A stretch of 64,000 nucleotides of DNA, taken from contig CDMY01000466.1 of NCBI GenBank assembly GCA_001179505.1, positions 62,001 to 126,000 on the forward strand, in the 5' to 3' direction. A program made the translations under genes and the position numbers. Of this stretch, positions 56,198 to 63,751 are shown in pieces. The first letter of the stretch is position 1; each line of letters opens with the position of its first letter. The notes beneath the pieces are model-generated. The model searched no databases, was not told where the DNA came from, and saw nothing but the letters and a program-made list of their open reading frames with translations. The DNA comes from Vitrella brassicaformis CCMP3155 (Eukaryota > Protista > Chromerida).

Positions 56198-56759
56198 ATG
56201 AGCCCAACGAGCTTTTGGCCCCTTTGGATGTTCATTCCTCTGCTCCTCTGGCAGCAAGGAGGCGAGCCCCCTGTCGTCGTTGCCATCATGAACGCCCCCG
56301 AGAAGACAGAAAGGCAAGGCAGTGCACTCTCGCCCCCCTTACCGTCCCCTGCCACGAGAGGCTCAGCCCCGCGACAAGGCGTGATGACACAAATACTCGA
56401 GAACACCACTGTGTCGTCAACAGCCGCCGCCAACGTCAGTATGGTTGCCCATGAGGCCAAGGGCATGACGTCGGCCAACGCCAGCGACGACAGCAGGCCC
56501 GAAGTCACAGTGTGGATGCAGTGGAAAACACCCAAGAGTGAGACAGACAGTGGATGAAGCATGGCAATTGATTGCACTCATTGCATGTGTGTGTGTTCCC
56601 GTGTGTGCAGGCCATCGGGTGTCTTCTGCTCATGGCGAAGGGCACAGGGCTCCTTACCACTGCAACACGACGGTGCAGGAGTGTTCGGTGGACAAAGACT
56701 GCTGTTCTCGTGTGTGTGTTGACAGCGGTGGCCCAGACATGAGGGGCTTCTGCAACTAA
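56198..56759 (+). CDS. Secreted prepropeptide (162 aa) with a C-terminal inhibitor-cystine-knot (knottin)-like domain
   Basis: Exons 56198-56537 and 56611-56759 join in phase 1. The leader is hydrophobic (MSPTSFWPLWMFIPLLLWQQ) and the C-terminus is CNTTVQECSVDKDCCSRVCVDSGGPDMRGFCN* (C-x6-C-x5-CC-x3-C-x11-C). Confidence 0.75.
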
Positions 56760-57149: not shown

Positions 57150-60100
57150 TCATCGTGTGTGGATGGATTCATCGTCACTATCATATATCTTGGTCTCATG
57201 GACATATGATGGTAGAATCGGCTGCATGTCATATATTCTGAAGTCGTATATCGCGAAGCTGCCGGAATGTCTCTCACAGAACATCCTCCTTGCCTTTCTC
57301 GAATAGCATCTGAGGACACGCACACAAATCACCCATTGCGCGACCGAACACCCTTTGCATGCACTTACATTCAACTTCATTTGTGTCCGGTTCGCCATGA
57401 TGGTCTCCAGCTGATCCTGGACGAACCCCCATAACTGCGACAAGGGAGTCATTCCCACATTGTTGCAATGACCGCGTTGGCGTACCTTTGTCTTCCACTT
57501 CTCTGCTTTTGACCGACTAACACGGCCACTAGCGGGCACCTCCAAAAGTCCCCGGGCTTTCTTCTCTTCTCTAACGCTAAGCGCGATCATGCCCATCCTC
57601 CACTGACAAGACAAGCACATAGATTGTCCTCCCACATAGCACCTTCCTGCCCGTAGTACCTCTTCCTTCCACAATTCCGCCTGCAGACACATCACCGCAT
57701 GCCAGAACACAGCGATACCGTGTGGCTCGAGGTCGACAGCCAAGGTGAGCGCGATTTCGAGCCCATGGATGTCGCAGTCACCGAAGTGGAAGACCTGTAC
57801 ACGAAGCAGGACACACACACCGAATGGGTCTCGTTTGCGTGTGTGTCCCGTTATGTGTGTCACTGTGTATCGTGTTAGGTGTATCTCGCTCACCGCTACT
57901 CGTACTTCTTTGGATATGGCTGTGAGTAACAAGCGAACAGCGTCGCCCGGCATGCCCTTGGCTGAGTAAAGACGCCCATGGCGCAGGCAATCGCTCACTC
58001 CTTTTCTTCATCTATACTTGCGATGACTATGTCGAAGAGGCCCATCTGGTACACCTGGCCCCCCGCTGCCTCGGTCTCAGTAGTGGCGACCGTCACGCGC
58101 CGACCGTCCAGCCAGTTGCGCAGCCCCTCAGAAAAATGGCCCACCAGACCTATGTCACCTGGACATGCAAAAGATACGAGCGACACCTGGTTGGCCTCTC
58201 CGGTCGGTTACTGGCTCGTACCTGTGGACATCGCGTCGGTGAGCGGTGTGCCCTTGGGTTTGTCCGGCGTGACGAATCCCTCGGAGTCTTCTGCTTTGAT
58301 ATTGATGGCAGTGGACCAGATGAGGGCCCTGCTGGCTGAAGAGAGGCCTAACTGATGCGCCATGGCCCCGGTGAAGCGCCCGACACCTGGCACAGATACA
58401 CATCGCCACCACATGACCAGCATATGGATACTGACACGTCGGACACTTACCGTTCTTGAATGACTTCAGATCGCTCTCGAAGTTCCGGGAAGGGAATAGC
58501 CCCTTCATACGATACCCTAGCTGCCGACGATGTGCCGTCTCTTGAGACAACAACGCATCCACGATCGTCAGTTCTGCAGACAATACCCACAACGAAGTGG
58601 CGCTGCCCCGTCTATCATTTCGGTTTCTCACTCACGCGAAAAAGAGGATGTTTGTGTCCTTGTCAGTTGGTTCTCGACATTTCCAAAGGCTGAAGCCGCA
58701 GCTGCCGCAGCAGAAGGCGCGGCCTCGGCCTTGCCCGCCTGCACTCATTCAACGCGGATGGAGAGGGGGATGTGCCGGGTGTTCTGTTTGTGTGTGCACA
58801 GTGGATGCCTGACCTGCTGCGTGGGTTTGTGTGCTTTCTTGCGCTCCCCGTCTTCGTCGCCCTCATCACTATCCTGCATCCATCGCATGGCGGCCCATTC
58901 ACACACACATCGAGTCGTGCCGTCCCATCTCTCTCAACTCCTCTCTATATATCACTGTGTCTGACCTCCTCACTCTCATCATCGTCGTCATCGTAGTCTG
59001 AGTCGCCCTCGTCGTCATCGTCGTCGACCTCCTCGTCACCCAAGGCGGCCGCCTTGGCGAGATAGTTGTCAATGCCCCGCTGTCTCTGATCGCGTCCGTG
59101 AGCGGATGTGTCGAGATCCGCTGGCTCCTCCTTGACCGCACAAACCAGACGGACAATAATGGGCGACGTCAGTCCCATTCACGTCTGTGTACTTGTCTTC
59201 CCACTGACCTCGGTCTTCGTCTTCTTGCGGGGTCGCTGCTGCGGCCCCTCCGCACTGCTCCCCGTCCGACGGGACACAAAGCCATCCAGACACCGGCGCA
59301 CCCACGGCGACAGAGTAGAGGGATCCAGACCCACAGGATAGTCACCGATCGCCAAGAACGCGACGGCGACGGCGGGGATGAGGGCAAGACGCACACGCGC
59401 TTGATCACGCTCTGCAGATAAGCAAATGGATGCTCAATGTGGATGGATGCTCAGTGTGAGCAGACCCACAGACCTTCCGGCGTTCGCTTGCGCAGAAGAC
59501 CCTTGCCGTCGGGCAGGGCGTCCTTCAATCGGTCTCCCAGGTTAGACAGACCCTCGATCGTGTACACGGCCACCATCTCGTGCCACTCCCTCAGGAGGTC
59601 CTCACCCTCCTTATGGCTGAGCTCACTCGCCGCCGCCTCCACCTTGGGGGTCAACTCAGGCTGCAGGCACGACAGCGGACCTCGCGAATCTCTGTACATG
59701 AGAGCTTGAGGTGACCGCAGCGCGTACCAGTGCGTGTAGCGGGTATGTGTCGGCTGCGCGTGTCCCCCGGGGCATCGTGTAGACGAGCCGCACGACCCTC
59801 TTGACGAATAGGCCGCTCTCCTTATCCCACTTGTATGGGGCGGTCGCGGGTACTTCGGGATCTGCACCGTCACTGCGCGCACAGAGGAAGAGCATCTTTG
59901 CTCGTACGTCAGCATGATGTGTGTGCCTCACTTGAGATTGAGGATGCACCTCTTGAGATACGCTGGCACGTCCGGATACCCTTCAGCGAGGAGGCTGAGA
60001 TGTGCGGAGATCGGCGCGCACCTCCTCGGCAGCCAAAGCCAAGAGTCTCGAGAGCAAGTCAGGCAGGTAGCCAGATGCATCCGGCAACGACAGACACGTA

Positions 60101-60243
60101 GCAAAAGCGGAATTGTGGTCATGTGGCTCGTTCCCCGGCACCTCATCTGGTCGATTGGTTCGAGCTTGCTGAAGAGCGCCTACGAAGATCGCTCTGTGGT
60201 CCTTCTCAACCTCCAGCGTCTGCCACGACTCTTCGCTAGTCAT
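57150..60243 (-). CDS. SPO11-like: Highly divergent Spo11/topoisomerase VI-A-like protein with a long N-terminal extension and an acidic tract
   Basis: Phase-checked exons 58573-58451, 58386-58222, 58158-58018, 57961-57894 and 57794-> give: ETAHRRQLGYRMKGLF (catalytic Tyr position), VTVATTETEA (TOPRIM Glu), DIVIATKGMPGDAVRLLL, VFHFGDCDIHGLEIA (DxD) and IALSVREEKKARGLL. The stop is at 57150 or 57274, and the first exons are less certain. Confidence 0.82.
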
Positions 60244-60322
60244 TCTTGCTCTTCACGGCGAGCTTAGCGAGCTAGCCTCTGGATTTACGATTTGGCGCGA
60301 TTCATCTTTGCATTTCGCCAGC
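60244..60322. promoter_or_regulatory. Very short (79 bp ATG-to-ATG) divergent intergenic region between the Spo11-like and AP2 genes
   Basis: ATG at 60243 (-) and at 60323 (+; alternative 60422). Contains the tandem GCGAGCT(T)A GCGAGCTA at about 60258-60275. Confidence 0.45.
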
Positions 60323-61478
60323 ATGCAGGCCGCCGGCGGACAGCCAGCTAGGCGTCTACACCGCAAGCTCAGGCTTGGCGATAGTCCATCTGCCCGCAGG
60401 CCTGACAACGCAAACAATCGCATGGGTGTGGAGGGCGGGGAGGCCGCTGCTGCGCCGAAACGTAAGGCTGAGGCAGAGGTTGTGAGGATGGAGGTGGCCG
60501 TTGACAAAATTCACATGCATCACACCGACGGTGAGGGCGAATCGGTGGAAAAATCCATCTGTGGGGCATGGGCGACGATGGATGTGTGTGTGCAGCCGAC
60601 GGCGGTGGCGAGGTTGGAGGCGACAACTTCGACACATCCATCGCCGCGCGTCTCAAGAGGCGCAGAGCCATCTCCGACCACGTCGCCAAGAGTGCCGCCA
60701 AGGAGAAGGCCAAGCAGGAGCCCACGCCAGGTGACCACACAGAATGGTGCAGTGACATCTTCGGGATACATGTTTGCTCTCTTTGGTTTGATTGATGTGT
60801 TAGAGTTGCCGCAGCGGACTGAGGCGGACCGTCGACCCGCCGGCAATCCACAGTACGCCAGTAATCCCACGTGGGATGCCGCTGCGGGCCCCAGCGAGGG
60901 TAAGACGACGATCAAAGTGGCCCACTACCAGTCCGAGGTCCCAAACTGCACGTACCACGTGGGCCGGCACTCCTGGGTGGCGCGGCCGCCCGTAATCAAC
61001 GGCAAACGACCAGCGGGGAGCAAGGCGTTCAGCATCGACAAACTCGGGGAGCAGGCGGCCAGGGTTCGCGTGAGGGAGGGGAGAGAAAGGAGGGTGCGCA
61101 GATGTGTGCATCTGGTTCAGGATGGGGCGGAGGACTACACACGGCAGCTCGAGCTCAAGCACCGCCAGACAGCACCACAGAATGGCGGCAGGCCTGGCAT
61201 GCGGCGGGCAACACAGGATGGTGGCCCCGTGTGTCACACGCCTGGGGTGACGTGGGAGCGCAACAAGAAGATTTGGCGCGTCACATGGCAACAGAACGGC
61301 TCTCAACGGGAGGTGACCGTCAACCCCCGCCACCACGGCAACAGCGTCGAGCAGGCGATGAACCACGCGATCTCAACACGGGCGGAGAAGGTGAGCTGAC
61401 GCAGGGAGATTTGTGGTGTGAGGGCGATGGACATGTGTGTGTGCATATCAGGAGAGGACGTATGAATTCCACGAGTAA
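60323..61478 (+). CDS. ApiAP2-type transcription factor with two AP2 domains (about 299 aa, 5 exons)
   Basis: Exons 60323-60530, 60596-60730, 60804-61063, 61121-61390 and 61452-61478 are phase-consistent. AP2-1: SEVPNCTYHVGRHSWVAR...SKAFSIDKLGEQAARDGAEDY. AP2-2: HTPGVTWERNKKIWRVTWQQNGSQREVTVNPRHHGNSVEQAMNHAISTR. Confidence 0.82.
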
Positions 61479-61593
61479 CCGGTACATAACCGGTCCAAGT
61501 GATCCCACAACCCAACAACGGAGACACACTCGGTCGACCACCAAACACACACAGACCAGACCCCAGTCCGTCCCGCACAGAGACAGACCAGTG

Positions 61594-63751
61594 CTATCGA
61601 AGGCCGTGTTGTATGTCCGCCTGCCTGCATCCATGGACTTTCGTCTTGCTTGTGTGAATGGACGGTTCAATCAACTGGTATATCGAATGGGCTGGGTCTG
61701 TATCGGTCAACGAATGCATCAATCAAGGGCAGACAGACATGTATGTGTCTTGTGTTGCATTGCTTTGCTGCACACATTCAAACCAACGCAACAAAGCGCG
61801 ACAAGTCGATTTCTGCGGCACATGTTCAGCTCCAGTATATGGGTTCCCTCACCTTGGCGACGAAATCGGTCGACAGCGCAGCGGTGAAGATGGGGCCTGT
61901 TGCGAAGATCACTGTCCAGTAGACCCATGGCGATGACTGCACCCTCCCATCAACGCTGCACAAAGACGAATCGACAAAGACAAACAGAAAGTGAGCCACA
62001 GGGATGACAACACCAAGAGGCTCACGCACTCGGCAGCGTCCATGCTTCTCCGAACACCTTTCAGGACGACATCGTGAAGCGTATATGCCACGAGCGAATG
62101 CGTCCCCCATCTCGTCATGCGGGAAGGCCAACGGGGCACGAACACACAGATCGACACAGCCAGCACACTCGCCAGCTGACGAATGACAGACAGAGATACG
62201 AACCGTCCATCATGCTTTCACGCGCGGGCTTACAATAAACTGCGCGACGGCTTTTCTGCCCCAGACGAGGTAGTATTCCAGTTTTGCTCCAGAGGAGAAG
62301 TGTTCGCGCAGTGGGTCATCGAGCGGCGGGCTGCAGCACTGCTGGTAGGAGGCTGATTGCATATACGGGTGGAGCTCCTGCTTAAAGAAATGCCGAAATG
62401 CGGGCGATAGCAGCGTTAGGCAAATGTAGACCTTCAGAAACACCACCCCGCCTAGCTGCAGCCATCCCTGCACACGGAATTCACCGGGAAGGATGCACAC
62501 GAGCACATTCCCATCCACCGGTTAGAATACGTACCATTCGGGTGTGTTGCTCGACGGCCCTGTGCAGTGTCCGTGGGGGCGTGATGAGGCCCATGGCGAA
62601 GTAGGGGAGGAAGTGCAGCCCCATGCTCAACCACCATATCACCGGCGAGGGTTTGACATTCCAGGCATAGGGGAAGAACAAAGAGATGCTCAGACACGTC
62701 GATATCACATACCTGCAAAAAAGAGGAGAGAGGAAACACAACAGCTTGCTTACCTTCCCGACACCAATGGCTCATTCAGGCATGCGGACGTACGTACGTT
62801 CGTTTGAAGAGCAGCAGTGCTGGTGCGAGCAGCCTCCACATGACGAGAGAGCCGAGGTACCACAGGTGATGTGATGGACGCTCAGCACCCGCATAGCTGA
62901 CATACACCATGTAAAGGATGAGAGGGAGAGGAGGCATCAGATGCGTGTTTTGTGTGTGTCTCACCATTGTGCAAACGTGACAAGGTCCTTGGCTCTCACA
63001 GAAAAGGGAAGACAATGCGCCAACACCTACAGCACATGAAGTTCATTCCACGTCAGCGGTCACAACAAACCATTTCACCTACTGTGAGCTCGGTGACGAG
63101 CCAGAAGGGGACGATAAGAGAGCTGACCACACGAAACAGCCGCTGGGGGGCGAGGGCGCCCTTTGAGCAATAGCCGCTGGTAAAAGCATACATAGCGATG
63201 CACGGGGGGTTCAGCACCATCTCACGGAAGCCTGGCACCCAACTGACACGTACAGGCAGAAATGGGCGTGGGTACGGTGTGCCGGGTGCGGAGATGAATG
63301 AATGTCCATTCACCTCCATTCGTTCTCAAACGGGAAAGCGTAGAATGGCGACACGTAGTGAGAGGAAACCACCAGACACTGCAAGAGGACACCATCGCCT
63401 AGATGAATGCGCTTGCATCTCTCTACTGACCTGTGCGATGTATTTGAGGTTGTCGAGGTACGGCAGCCGCTTCCTCTCTGCCCCGTCATCACCTGATAGG
63501 GTCTCTGTGTCACTGGCTCCAAGCAGCGACCTGAATGGTTTCTCGTCTCCACCTCCTTCTGTGGCCGGCCTCTCCTCCTCTGCACGACACGCACACAGAG
63601 ACTAGAGGGCACATCAGACAAGATCTTTCGCGCTGGTCTGGTGTGGTGTCCTACCCAGGAGCTTCCCGGCAATGAATGGGACGGCGAGGACAACGCAGCC
63701 CAGAACGGCGCACACAACGGATGCTGGTGTGACTTGGCCAAGTGCTGCCAT
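61594..63751 (-). CDS. Acyltransferase family 3 (OafA / fucose-4-O-acetylase-like) polytopic membrane O-acyltransferase
   Basis: Spliced motifs RLPYLDNLKYIAQ|CLVVSSH, MYAFTSGYCSK, HLWYLGSLVMWRLLAP, FLPYFAMG and MTRWGTHSLVAYTLH occur in the canonical AT3 order. The last exon (LIEPS...*) is tentative. Confidence 0.82.

What the first reader, a model, noticed from the sequence alone, without database searches (positions are those of the whole stretch)
57150..60243. Cryptic, extremely divergent but catalytically intact-looking Spo11/TopoVI-A homolog with a ~350-aa N-terminal extension
Seen: manual splicing, including a 56-nt intron at 57962-58017 that removes an apparent stop/frameshift, recovers the Spo11 motifs in the right order and spacing. 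These are AHRRQLGYRMKGLF (compare tkRdiYY...lF; Tyr codon 58512-58514), TETEA (compare VEKEA), VIATKGMPG (compare liTgKGyP), FHFGDCDIHGLEIA (DxD), LSVREEKKARGLL (compare Lt.rD.kka..ll) and probably SYVHETKI (compare Ylp.Ki). Upstream is a long unknown helical region plus a D/E tract (59045-58965). Established: Spo11/Top6A use a winged-helix Tyr plus TOPRIM Glu/DxD to make covalent double-strand breaks. Canonical copies are well conserved and usually lack such an extension. The FGDxDxxGLxIA variant resembles bacterial Wadjet JetD/DUF2399-type TOPRIMs more than the eukaryotic vD.DP.Gi.I. Inference: this is an extra, fast-evolving paralog that may work without TopoVI-B, as a lineage-specific meiotic, genome-defence or rearrangement nuclease.
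Basis: partly seen in the sequence, partly recalled or inferred. Interest (0 to 1): 0.85.

Follow-up and report, generated by a model that had tools for sequence, protein, structure and literature searches.

The report
Divergent Spo11-like gene beside AP2
A transcribed, many-exon gene of the alga Vitrella brassicaformis encodes a very divergent relative of Spo11/topoisomerase VI-A, the enzyme that cuts both DNA strands; it belongs to a small family private to this alga in which every copy lies head to head with an AP2 DNA-binding gene, and what the family does is unknown.

Summary
The spliced ORF has at least 570 codons and carries, in Top6A/Spo11 order, R-x3-Y, the Toprim Glu, KGxP, DxD and the LS..EEKK motif. 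Two details are wrong. 'SYVHETKI' lies in the 3' UTR. The real stop (TGA 57274-57276) replaces an Arg codon kept by a close paralogue, so about 16 C-terminal residues are lost. The 5' end and ATG 60243 have no RNA support.

Homology to Top6A/Spo11 is significant for the Toprim half: hhalign E 6e-8 for the family, 2e-5 for the window protein alone. It is only suggestive for the Tyr domain alone. Pfam does not detect this copy or the other full-length paralogue.

This is probably not the ordinary SPO11 orthologue. Vitrella has at least two full-length copies, one Toprim-only copy and one fragment. Each lies head to head with a co-duplicated two-AP2-domain gene. Nothing similar turned up elsewhere among 1.8 billion representative proteins.

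Most likely it is a Mg2+/Tyr DNA-cleaving subunit working with its AP2 neighbour; that function is inferred, not shown.

The scan already reported this family on other DNA of this genome (s1-201631, s1-199303, s1-199304, s1-205553, s1-201901).

The parts
57153..57273 (-). 3' UTR.
   Evidence: The X1 transcript contig runs to 57153. The translation after the stop matches the P0001 C-terminus.
57274..57276 (-). Stop codon TGA, premature relative to the paralogues (CGA Arg in close paralogue L001).
   Evidence: The A>G at 57276 in run X2 is best explained as the L001 paralogue's transcript.
57274..59872 (-). RNA-supported coding region of 14 exons: 57274-57309, 57369-57434, 57486-57602, 57660-57794, 57894-57961, 58018-58158, 58222-58386, 58451-58573, 58636-58738, 58814-58873, 58966-59130, 59209-59411, 59474-59660, 59728-59872. 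It gives an open frame of 570 codons. The 5' edge of the last-named exon is inferred from an acceptor whose position and phase match intron 1 of P0002.
   Evidence: 13 spliced joints in RNA contigs. Boundaries and translation. Nine intron positions and phases are shared with P0002 (plus alignment).
57962..58017 (-).
   Evidence: Joint 57961|58018 appears in both RNA runs. P0002 has an intron at the same position and phase (434.1).
58452..58571 (-). Exon encoding the putative 5Y-CAP helix with Arg 58524-58526 and the candidate catalytic Tyr 58512-58514 (R-x3-Y).
   Evidence: It aligns with the Top6A TKRDvfY motif in hhalign and MAFFT. This domain alone is not significant (P 0.023).
58019..58156 (-). 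Exon with the Toprim Glu (58076-58078, TTETEA).
   Evidence: It aligns with the VEKDA Glu of Top6A.
57660..57959 (-). KGMPG (57948-57959) and the DxD strand FHFGDCDIHGLEIA (Asp 57777-57779 and 57771-57773), separated by the 99-nt intron 57795-57893.
   Evidence: hmmsearch with an archaeal Top6A HMM scores 20.8 bits on this block after splicing. K, G, P, D, D, G and I are invariant in alignment A6.
57369..57602 (-). C-terminal part of the Toprim domain: LSVREEKKARGLL and QMKLN (the KaEieal-like motif).
   Evidence: P0001 is 82% identical here.
58814..59045 (-). Acidic D/E tract (26 of 35 residues), spanning the end of exon 58966-59130 and exon 58814-58873. It is absent from P0002.
59209..59872 (-). 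Conserved part of the N-terminal extension (37% identical to P0002 residues 90-254). Fold unknown. It contains a hydrophobic stretch of about 18 residues.
   Evidence: E 9e-22. No Pfam or Atlas match.
59873..60243 (-). Unresolved 5' region: candidate first exon from ATG 60241-60243 and a possible small exon near 59932-59995. No RNA contig covers it.
   Evidence: Depth is 0 in X1/X2. Several in-frame GT-AG models exist. Third-position GC favours a frame switch near 59986.
60308..61681 (+). Divergently oriented partner gene with two AP2-type domains. It was co-duplicated with the Spo11-like gene.
   Evidence: Pfam AP2 scores 37.3 bits against a cut-off of 33.3. It is homologous to the AP2 genes beside every other copy. 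Homology with L001 ends at 61681.

Best explanation
The locus is a transcribed, correctly spliced member of a small Vitrella-specific family of extremely divergent Top6A/Spo11-type proteins. Each full-length member has an N-terminal extension of about 300 residues with no known fold, then a 5Y-CAP-like module with R-x3-Y, then a Toprim domain with Glu, KGxP and DxD.

By analogy with Top6A/Spo11, the protein most likely dimerises. It would then cut duplex DNA by Mg2+-assisted attack of the Tyr of one protomer at the Toprim metal site of the other, leaving a covalent 5'-phosphotyrosyl link.

Every copy is kept head to head with a gene for a protein carrying two AP2 domains, and the two genes were duplicated together. 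I therefore infer that the AP2 protein is co-expressed from the short shared intergenic region and supplies DNA-sequence recognition, giving a two-gene, site-directed DNA-breaking module.

This particular copy has lost about 16 C-terminal residues to a CGA-to-TGA change, so it may be weakened or on its way to decay.

Shown: transcription, splicing, homology of the Toprim half, conservation of the catalytic residues, copy number, and AP2 linkage.
Inferred: catalysis, dimerisation, the covalent intermediate, and cooperation with AP2.
For: - Transcription and 13 spliced introns. Open frame of 570 codons.
- Homology: family versus 28 Pfam-verified archaeal Top6A gives hhalign probability 94.7%, E 6.4e-8, 210 columns, with Tyr, Glu, KGxP and DxD aligned. 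The Toprim half alone gives E 8e-7, against 0.04 at best for controls. The window protein alone gives E 2e-5 and hmmsearch P 8e-9.
- MAFFT makes KGxP and DxD..G..I invariant, and R, Y and E nearly invariant.
- ESM Atlas for paralogue P0002 residues 290-616: feature score 0.93, with all best clusters Top6A/Spo11. The Atlas's own alignment-free model matches Spo11 clusters at TM 0.58-0.62 over residues 303-607, which include the Tyr region.
- The Toprim-only paralogue passes Pfam PF21180 (30.3 bits against 24.1) and hits NCBIfam Top6A at E 6e-7.
- Fold search with the model built on alignment A6: Top6A 1d3y Z 10.0, 2zbk 9.4, 2q2e 9.2, yeast Spo11 8uru 9.0; the next hit is MksG at 6.4.
- Long-term constraint: the window protein and P0002 are only 39% identical, yet both keep R-x3-Y, Glu and DxD. 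Nine intron positions and phases are shared.
- AP2 linkage holds at all four loci seen here. Coding starts lie 53-217 nt apart at the two loci with annotated full gene models, L003 and L037. The AP2 partners show the same branching pattern as the Spo11-like partners (68% versus 26% identity, against 82% versus 41%).
- The window/L001 duplication unit ends exactly at the edges of the gene pair.
Against: - No biochemical evidence exists.
- The 5Y-CAP module alone is not significantly similar to Top6A (P 0.023).
- Neither AlphaFold model is confident there. pLDDT is 48 with the shallow alignment and about 50 in that region with alignment A6.
- The A6-based model and its fold matches are partly circular, because most rows of A6 are Top6A.
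- Pfam, NCBIfam and PDB sequence searches find nothing for the window pieces or for P0002.
- This copy carries a premature stop, and its 5' end is unproven.
- One paralogue lacks the Tyr module altogether and still looks like the best-conserved copy.
- Head-to-head linkage could reflect only small segmental duplications in a compact genome.
- No B-subunit partner was examined.
Confidence: 0.55

Rival explanations
1. This copy is a decaying, non-functional paralogue (a transcribed pseudogene) in a birth-and-death gene family. Only other copies, if any, are active.
For: - A CGA-to-TGA nonsense change removes the C-terminal helix that all three paralogues keep.
- The 5' region has no RNA support and needs unverified splicing to join ATG 60243.
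- The family contains a 3' fragment (L001, which lacks the 2.84 kb matching window 57703-60539) and a Toprim-only copy.
- Exon and intron divergence between the window and L001 are similar in the short stretch compared.
Against: - All 13 tested introns are spliced. 570 codons remain open. Every catalytic residue is intact.
- The stop lies in the last exon and removes only about 16 residues outside the catalytic motifs.
- The same stop allele is in the X1 transcript contig. Its strain is coded, so this shows no age.
Confidence: 0.2
2. It works like the Wadjet/MksG nuclease subunit (JetD/MksG). That is a CAP-plus-Toprim protein that cuts DNA hydrolytically through the Toprim metal site, without a covalent tyrosine intermediate.
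For: - PADLOC JetD models hit the GDxD block: E 7e-8 for the Toprim-only paralogue, 0.005 for the window piece, 0.009 for P0002.
- Pfam JetD_C and DUF2399 give sub-threshold hits.
- A Toprim-only paralogue exists without any Tyr module.
- MksG (8b7f) is the next fold match after Top6A/Spo11.
Against: - The JetD matches cover only about 75 residues. The Top6A matches cover the whole Toprim domain, including the C-terminal L(S/T)..D/E.KK and K.E motifs, and run on into the Tyr region.
- R-x3-Y is conserved in both full-length paralogues.
- Fold Z is 9-10 for Top6A/Spo11 against 6.4 for MksG, and JetD 7til has Foldseek E 0.39.
- No SMC-type neighbours appear among the genes called at the three annotated genome loci L001, L003 and L037.
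Confidence: 0.12
3. It is simply the alga's ordinary meiotic SPO11-1 or SPO11-2 orthologue, poorly annotated.
For: - It has the Top6A/Spo11 architecture and catalytic residues.
- Alveolates usually keep SPO11-1 and SPO11-2 (PMC9665070, PMC11302465).
Against: - There are several copies in one genome, and each is paired with an AP2 gene.
- Neither Pfam Spo11/Top6A model detects it, whereas real Top6A proteins score E 1e-60.
- Only three relatives, all from Vitrella, were found among 1.84 billion representative proteins.
- A homology-based survey already finds Spo11 in Vitrella (PMC7522995), and such a survey would hardly have picked up this family.
- It is transcribed in ordinary culture transcriptomes.
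Confidence: 0.05
4. The AP2 plus Spo11-like pair is the cargo of, or derives from, a mobile element. The Spo11-like protein would act as its DNA breaking-and-joining enzyme and the AP2 protein as its site selector.
For: - The pair recurs at several loci as one unit, and the window/L001 homology stops exactly at the edges of the pair.
- AP2 domains accompany homing endonucleases in other lineages (established knowledge).
- Type IIB A-subunit relatives (Topo VIII, Mini-A) are carried by prokaryotic mobile elements (PMC7671362, PMC4117785).
Against: - No terminal inverted or direct repeats flank the pair in the window, L001 or L003.
- The copies are old (26-41% protein identity) apart from one duplication, and the genes have many host-type introns at conserved positions.
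- Nothing similar was found in the metagenome contig collection or on plasmids.
Confidence: 0.08

Closest known systems
Topoisomerase VI subunit A / Spo11 (type IIB topoisomerase A subunit; Pfam PF04406 TP6A_N plus PF21180 TOP6A-Spo11_Toprim)
   Same: - Same order of modules and motifs: R-x3-Y helix, Toprim Glu, KGxP, DxD..G..I, L(S/T)..(D/E).KK and K.E.
- Significant profile-profile similarity over 210-216 columns.
- Best fold matches.
   Different: - About 15% identity, and invisible to the Pfam models for the full-length copies.
- An N-terminal extension of about 300 residues with no known fold, and an acidic tract in this copy.
- The DxDP proline is replaced (GDCDIHG).
- Multi-copy and private to Vitrella.
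- Always paired with an AP2 gene.
- No B subunit shown.
- This copy is C-terminally truncated.
JetD / MksG nuclease subunits of Wadjet-type SMC defence systems (Pfam PF09983 JetD_C, PF09664 DUF2399)
   Same: - CAP-plus-Toprim architecture.
- The (F/W)GDxD..G(L/F).I(A/L) form of the metal-binding strand.
- Weak HMM hits.
   Different: - The hits are short and below Pfam thresholds.
- JetD lacks the catalytic Tyr motif (established knowledge), whereas this family keeps R-x3-Y.
- No SMC/kleisin neighbours.
- This is a eukaryotic gene with many introns.
Mini-A and Topo VIII (stand-alone or fused type IIB A-subunit relatives on prokaryotic mobile elements; PMC7671362, PMC4117785)
   Same: Highly divergent Top6A-like proteins outside the canonical TopoVI/Spo11 clades; Mini-A has no B subunit.
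   Different: - Those are prokaryotic and carried on plasmids or viruses.
- No sequence comparison could be made here.
- The Vitrella genes are nuclear, rich in introns and linked to AP2 genes.
Vitrella protein CEM16296.1 / A0A0G4FQ08 (P0004), named by UniProt 'Topoisomerase 6 subunit A/Spo11 TOPRIM domain-containing protein'
   Same: - Paralogue of the window gene (about 41% identity over the Toprim half).
- Also head to head with an AP2 gene.
   Different: It has only the Toprim domain (243 aa) and no Tyr module or N-terminal extension. It is the one family member that automatic annotation already recognises.

Membership tests
Top6A/Spo11 (type IIB topoisomerase A subunit) | Toprim domain with the catalytic Glu and the DxD metal site, followed by the family-specific C-terminal motifs | tested here: met
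   hhalign of the Toprim half gives E 8e-7 against 0.04 at best for controls. The window protein alone gives E 2e-5 and hmmsearch P 8e-9. Glu 58076-58078 and Asp 57777-57779 / 57771-57773 align with the Top6A Glu and DxD.
Top6A/Spo11 (type IIB topoisomerase A subunit) | 5Y-CAP (winged-helix) domain carrying the catalytic Tyr, with Arg four residues before it | tested here: inconclusive
   R-x3-Y is present in the window protein and in P0002 and falls in the Top6A R/Y columns. The Atlas model aligns to Spo11 from residue 303. The domain alone gives P 0.023, no better than shuffles, and model confidence there is about 50.
Top6A/Spo11 (type IIB topoisomerase A subunit) | Score above the curated Pfam thresholds for PF21180 and PF04406 | tested here: not met
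   No hit for the window pieces or for P0002, even at E 10. Only the Toprim-only paralogue passes PF21180 (30.3 against 24.1 bits). Archaeal controls score E 1e-59 to 1e-65.
Top6A/Spo11 (type IIB topoisomerase A subunit) | Dimer with a composite active site that forms a covalent 5'-phosphotyrosyl DNA intermediate | not testable with these tools
   This needs biochemistry or a confident multimer model.
Top6A/Spo11 (type IIB topoisomerase A subunit) | Works with a Top6B or TOPOVIBL-type partner | not tested
   The only lead is an unchecked note from the earlier scan about a TopoVIB-like gene elsewhere in the genome (s1-218707).
Meiotic SPO11-1 / SPO11-2 orthologue | Single or low-copy gene of ordinary conservation that groups with alveolate SPO11-1/-2 | tested here: not met
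   There are at least four loci in one genome. Only Vitrella relatives were found among 1.84 billion representatives. Standard models do not detect it. No tree with eukaryotic SPO11 could be built, because no such sequences could be fetched.
JetD / MksG (Wadjet nuclease subunit) | Score above the curated threshold for the JetD C-terminal Toprim models | tested here: not met
   Pfam JetD_C scores 13 bits against 22, and DUF2399 17.8 against 23.4. PADLOC JetD gives E 0.005-0.009 for the window and P0002, over about 75 residues only.
JetD / MksG (Wadjet nuclease subunit) | Encoded next to SMC-like JetC, kleisin JetA and JetB | tested here: not met
   The called neighbours at L001, L003 and L037 are AP2, RNase P p29, peptidase M3, kinesin and other genes. 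None is of SMC type.
Mini-A / Topo VIII | Sequence membership in those clades and carriage on a plasmid, virus or integrated element | not tested
   No reference sequences were available. Plasmid tblastn gave only chance-level hits, and no element termini were found.

The most novel reading that the evidence does not exclude
Vitrella carries a previously undescribed two-gene DNA-breaking module. An AP2-domain protein reads a DNA sequence and recruits a dimeric, B-subunit-independent Spo11-like transesterase, whose novel N-terminal domain is the docking or regulatory part. The module makes programmed, site-specific double-strand breaks. The module has been duplicated and diversified, with each copy possibly having its own target. 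It would serve a lineage-specific process such as developmental genome rearrangement, mating-type-like switching or genome defence, or it would behave as a selfish homing-like unit.
Probability: 0.2. Interest if true: 0.85.

Novelty: new variant of a known kind. Interest (0 to 1): 0.6.

Why it matters
Spo11/Top6A is the only eukaryotic enzyme family known to make programmed double-strand breaks through a covalent tyrosine link. It is normally a well-conserved, low-copy gene tied to meiosis or to topoisomerase VI.

Here a close algal relative of the apicomplexan parasites has a private, multi-copy and extremely divergent branch of that family. The branch keeps the catalytic residues, has gained a large unknown domain, and has stayed physically coupled to an AP2 DNA-binding gene through duplications old enough to leave only 26-40% protein identity.

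If the coupling is functional, it would be a new way of aiming a Spo11-type nuclease at specific sequences. It would also give the much-studied AP2 family of apicomplexans and chromerids a role beyond transcription.

On the practical side, standard annotation misses these genes. This copy has no full-length protein in the searched collection, and its full-length paralogue is listed as 'uncharacterized'. Surveys of meiotic toolkits and of topoisomerase VI should be aware of them.

Tried and rejected
- Pfam, NCBIfam and PDB sequence searches with the unspliced ORFs, the in-frame Toprim piece, P0002 and a five-row family profile gave nothing useful.
- Word-indexed protein searches with P0002 (whole, and residues 405-505 at E 10) and with the Toprim-only ORF returned only the queries' own clusters. 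This gave no route to eukaryotic SPO11 sequences, so no phylogeny with SPO11-1/2/3 was built.
- An alignment of separate exon translations with P0002 was misplaced by MAFFT and discarded.
- AlphaFold with a five-row alignment was too poor to use (pLDDT 48).
Plasmid tblastn gave chance-level hits only.
- RNA editing of the stop codon was rejected. The A>G at 57276 in run X2 sits 31 nt from a contig end. Paralogue L001 is identical for 52 nt downstream and differs 4 and 7 nt upstream, so the variant contig is best read as the paralogue's transcript.
- A frameshift in exon 1 was rejected as unproven. Similarity of any frame to the P0002 N-terminus is not significant (z about 1), and canonical two-intron models give an intact frame.
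- A transposon with terminal repeats was not supported.
- The supplement of PMC7522995 holds trees only as images, so the accession of the canonical Vitrella Spo11 could not be read.


Full report
**What is in the sequence**

The window has 59% G+C. Its relatives come from Vitrella brassicaformis CCMP3155, assembly GCA_001179505.1.

Two runs that the tool guessed to be RNA (X1, X2) carry contigs that skip 13 segments. All 13 have CT..AC ends on the plus strand, which is GT..AG on the minus strand. Contigs of DNA runs X3/X4 are colinear with the window. After placing the cuts on GT/AG, the introns are 57310-57368, 57435-57485, 57603-57659, 57795-57893, 57962-58017, 58159-58221, 58387-58450, 58574-58635, 58739-58813, 58874-58965, 59131-59208, 59412-59473 and 59661-59727.

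The spliced message has one open frame of 570 codons running from the acceptor at 59872 to TGA 57274-57276. It holds these features:
- Arg 58524-58526 and Tyr 58512-58514, in AHRRQLGYRMKGLF
- Glu 58076-58078, in TTETEA
- KGMPG, 57948-57959
- Asp 57777-57779 and 57771-57773, in FHFGDCDIHGLEIA
- LSVREEKKARGLL and QMKLN
- an acidic tract with 26 of 35 residues D or E

**Corrections to the observation**

'SYVHETKI' lies in the 3' UTR in another frame. The transcript contig ends at 57153.

The stop is premature. Proteins P0001, P0002 and P0003 continue for 16-25 residues past this point. The close paralogue L001 has CGA where the window has TGA. The window's next 16 codons still spell the same peptide as P0001.

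An A>G at 57276 seen in one X2 contig is best explained as the transcript of that paralogue, not as editing.

No RNA contig covers 59850-60243. ATG 60243 cannot be joined to the proven frame by reading straight through, because TGA at 59983-59985 intervenes. It can be joined by several canonical one- or two-intron models. Third-position G+C suggests a frame switch near 59986. No frame resembles the P0002 N-terminus significantly. The 5' end is therefore unresolved, and the protein is somewhere between about 577 and 655 residues.

**Relatives**

An exhaustive phmmer search with the in-frame Toprim piece against 1.84 billion representative proteins found only three proteins, all from Vitrella:
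- P0002, 616 aa, CEM09875.1, listed as 'uncharacterized'
- P0001, a 91-aa fragment, 82% identical
- P0003, 150 aa, from an MMETSP transcript contig. Its genome version is P0004, CEM16296.1, 243 aa.

The window protein and P0002 are 39% identical over the catalytic half and 37% over the N-terminal extension. Nine intron positions have the same phase in both genes, among them the 56-nt intron site.

P0004 and L002 encode only the Toprim part.

L001 keeps only the last 480 nt of the gene and lacks the 2.84 kb that matches window 57703-60539.

Notes from earlier in this scan describe further copies in the same genome (s1-201631, s1-199303, s1-205553, s1-201901). I treat those as leads only.

**Is it Top6A/Spo11?**

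Pfam, NCBIfam and PDB sequence searches see nothing for the window pieces or for P0002.

To obtain a reference set I scanned prokaryotic genomes with a degenerate DNA pattern for EK.A.F ... KG.P ... D.DP.G. From the hits I extracted 28 ORFs and confirmed four of them as Top6A with Pfam, at E 1e-59 to 1e-65.

Profile comparisons against that set gave:
- Family catalytic part: probability 94.7%, E 6.4e-8, 210 columns. Tyr, Glu, KGxP, DxD and the LS..D/E.KK motif all fall in the matching columns.
- Toprim half alone: E 8e-7.
- Reversed and 20 column-shuffled controls: P 0.04 at best.
- Window protein alone: E 2e-5 over 216 columns.
- An HMM of the archaeal set scores the block IVIATKGMPG...FHFGDCDIHGLEIAL at 20.8 bits, P 8e-9. 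That block exists only after introns 57962-57917 and 57795-57893 are removed; the first of these is 57962-58017.

An independent MAFFT alignment makes K-G-x-P and D-x-D..G..I invariant, and R, Y and E nearly invariant.

The Toprim-only paralogue passes Pfam PF21180 (30.3 against 24.1 bits, covering 4-159 of 170 model positions). It also hits NCBIfam Top6A at E 6e-7.

ESM Atlas gives a feature score of 0.93 for P0002 residues 290-616, with all best clusters Top6A/Spo11. Its own alignment-free model matches Spo11 clusters at TM 0.58-0.62 over residues 303-607.

**The weak point: the Tyr module**

Taken alone, the Tyr module aligns to the right part of Top6A but only at P 0.023, which shuffles also reach. 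AlphaFold is not confident there.

The better AlphaFold model has pLDDT 60 overall and 80-92 in the Toprim core. It finds Top6A and yeast Spo11 first: Foldseek E 6e-5 to 9e-4, and VIA Z 10.0, 9.4, 9.2 and 9.0, with the next hit MksG at 6.4. Its alignment was mostly Top6A, so this is not independent evidence.

**JetD or Top6A?**

PADLOC JetD models do hit the GDxD block: E 7e-8 for the Toprim-only copy, and 0.005-0.009 for the window and P0002.

Those matches span only about 75 residues and stay below Pfam thresholds. The Top6A similarity covers the whole Toprim domain and continues into the R-x3-Y region. I could not obtain JetD sequences for a direct profile comparison.

**Context**

Every copy seen here lies head to head with a gene that has AP2 domains:
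- window: 60308-61399 and onward, Pfam 37.3 bits against a cut-off of 33.3
- L003: 6344-7783
- L037: 4124-5947
- L001: 3228-5888
- L002: 230-1201

 Coding starts are 53-217 nt apart at L003 and L037, the two loci with annotated full gene models.

The AP2 partners show the same relationships as the Spo11-like partners. Window/L001 are 68% identical against 26% for window/L002; the Spo11-like proteins give 82% against 41%. So the pair has been duplicated and kept as a unit since deep in the family's history.

The window/L001 homology ends sharply at 57215-57219 and at 61681, the outer edges of the pair. No terminal repeats were found.

I noticed the linkage, before reading note s1-199304, which reports the same pair at three places.

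**Interpretation**

The gene is not the ordinary SPO11. The literature credits Vitrella with a complete meiotic set including Spo11 (PMC7522995). Recent surveys of TopoVI/SPO11 diversity do not mention Vitrella or chromerids (PMC9665070, PMC11302465).

R-x3-Y, Glu and DxD are retained between paralogues that are only 39% identical. That argues for a conserved catalytic function, most simply Spo11-type Mg2+/Tyr cleavage by a dimer. The persistent AP2 linkage suggests sequence-directed targeting.

Both of these points are inferences. This particular copy may be impaired by its truncated C-terminus.

The N-terminal extension has no detectable relative.

I rate identity as a divergent Top6A/Spo11 homologue at about 0.9. 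I rate the full mechanistic statement at about 0.55 or lower.

Noticed in passing
L003:10020-10067: The annotated model of paralogue P0002 (CEM09875.1) translates a 48-nt stretch, GTAGGC...TTTTCAG. It sits at exactly the phase-0 position where the window gene has its RNA-proven 99-nt intron. It is probably an unrecognised in-frame intron, so the true protein would be about 600 aa from 14 exons.
   Followed up: partly
L037:4124-7283 (CDMY01000477.1) and L002: A Toprim-only paralogue (P0004, 243 aa) has no Tyr module or N-terminal extension and lies 53 nt from its own AP2 gene. The MMETSP contig L002 spans both genes on opposite strands. This copy is the least divergent from canonical Top6A (it passes Pfam PF21180), and UniProt already names it accordingly.
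   Followed up: partly
L001:5913-6410 (CDMY01000282.1): This is a 3' fragment of a close paralogue, 87% identical in DNA to window 57219-57702 and annotated as the 91-aa protein CEL99501.1. It appears to be transcribed in run X2, and it keeps the Arg codon where the window has its stop.
   Followed up: partly
window 59209-59409 (minus strand); P0002 residues about 210-228: A hydrophobic stretch of about 18 residues (LALIPAVAVAFLAIG / VGVLCAVGALVLATG) is conserved in the N-terminal extension of both full-length paralogues. It could be a buried helix or a membrane-associating segment.
   Followed up: no
window 60244-60322: Only about 80 nt separate ATG 60243 of the Spo11-like gene from the first ATG of the AP2 open frame. 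Either the two 5' UTRs overlap or one of the assumed start codons is wrong.
   Followed up: no
window 56198-56759: Another first-stage note (s1-235930) flags a cysteine-rich knottin-like open frame just downstream of this gene's 3' end. I did not examine it.
   Followed up: no
L004-L036 (prokaryotic genome contigs): The degenerate pattern EK.A.F..KG.P..D.DP.G recovered Top6A genes mainly from Asgard (Heimdall-, Njord-, Sif-, Borr-archaea), Thermoprotei and Nanopusillus genomes. The Heimdall-type proteins carry an extra N-terminal domain of about 100 residues. Two bacterial hits (L012, L028) and one from Clostridia (L013) were chance matches without an ORF.
   Followed up: partly
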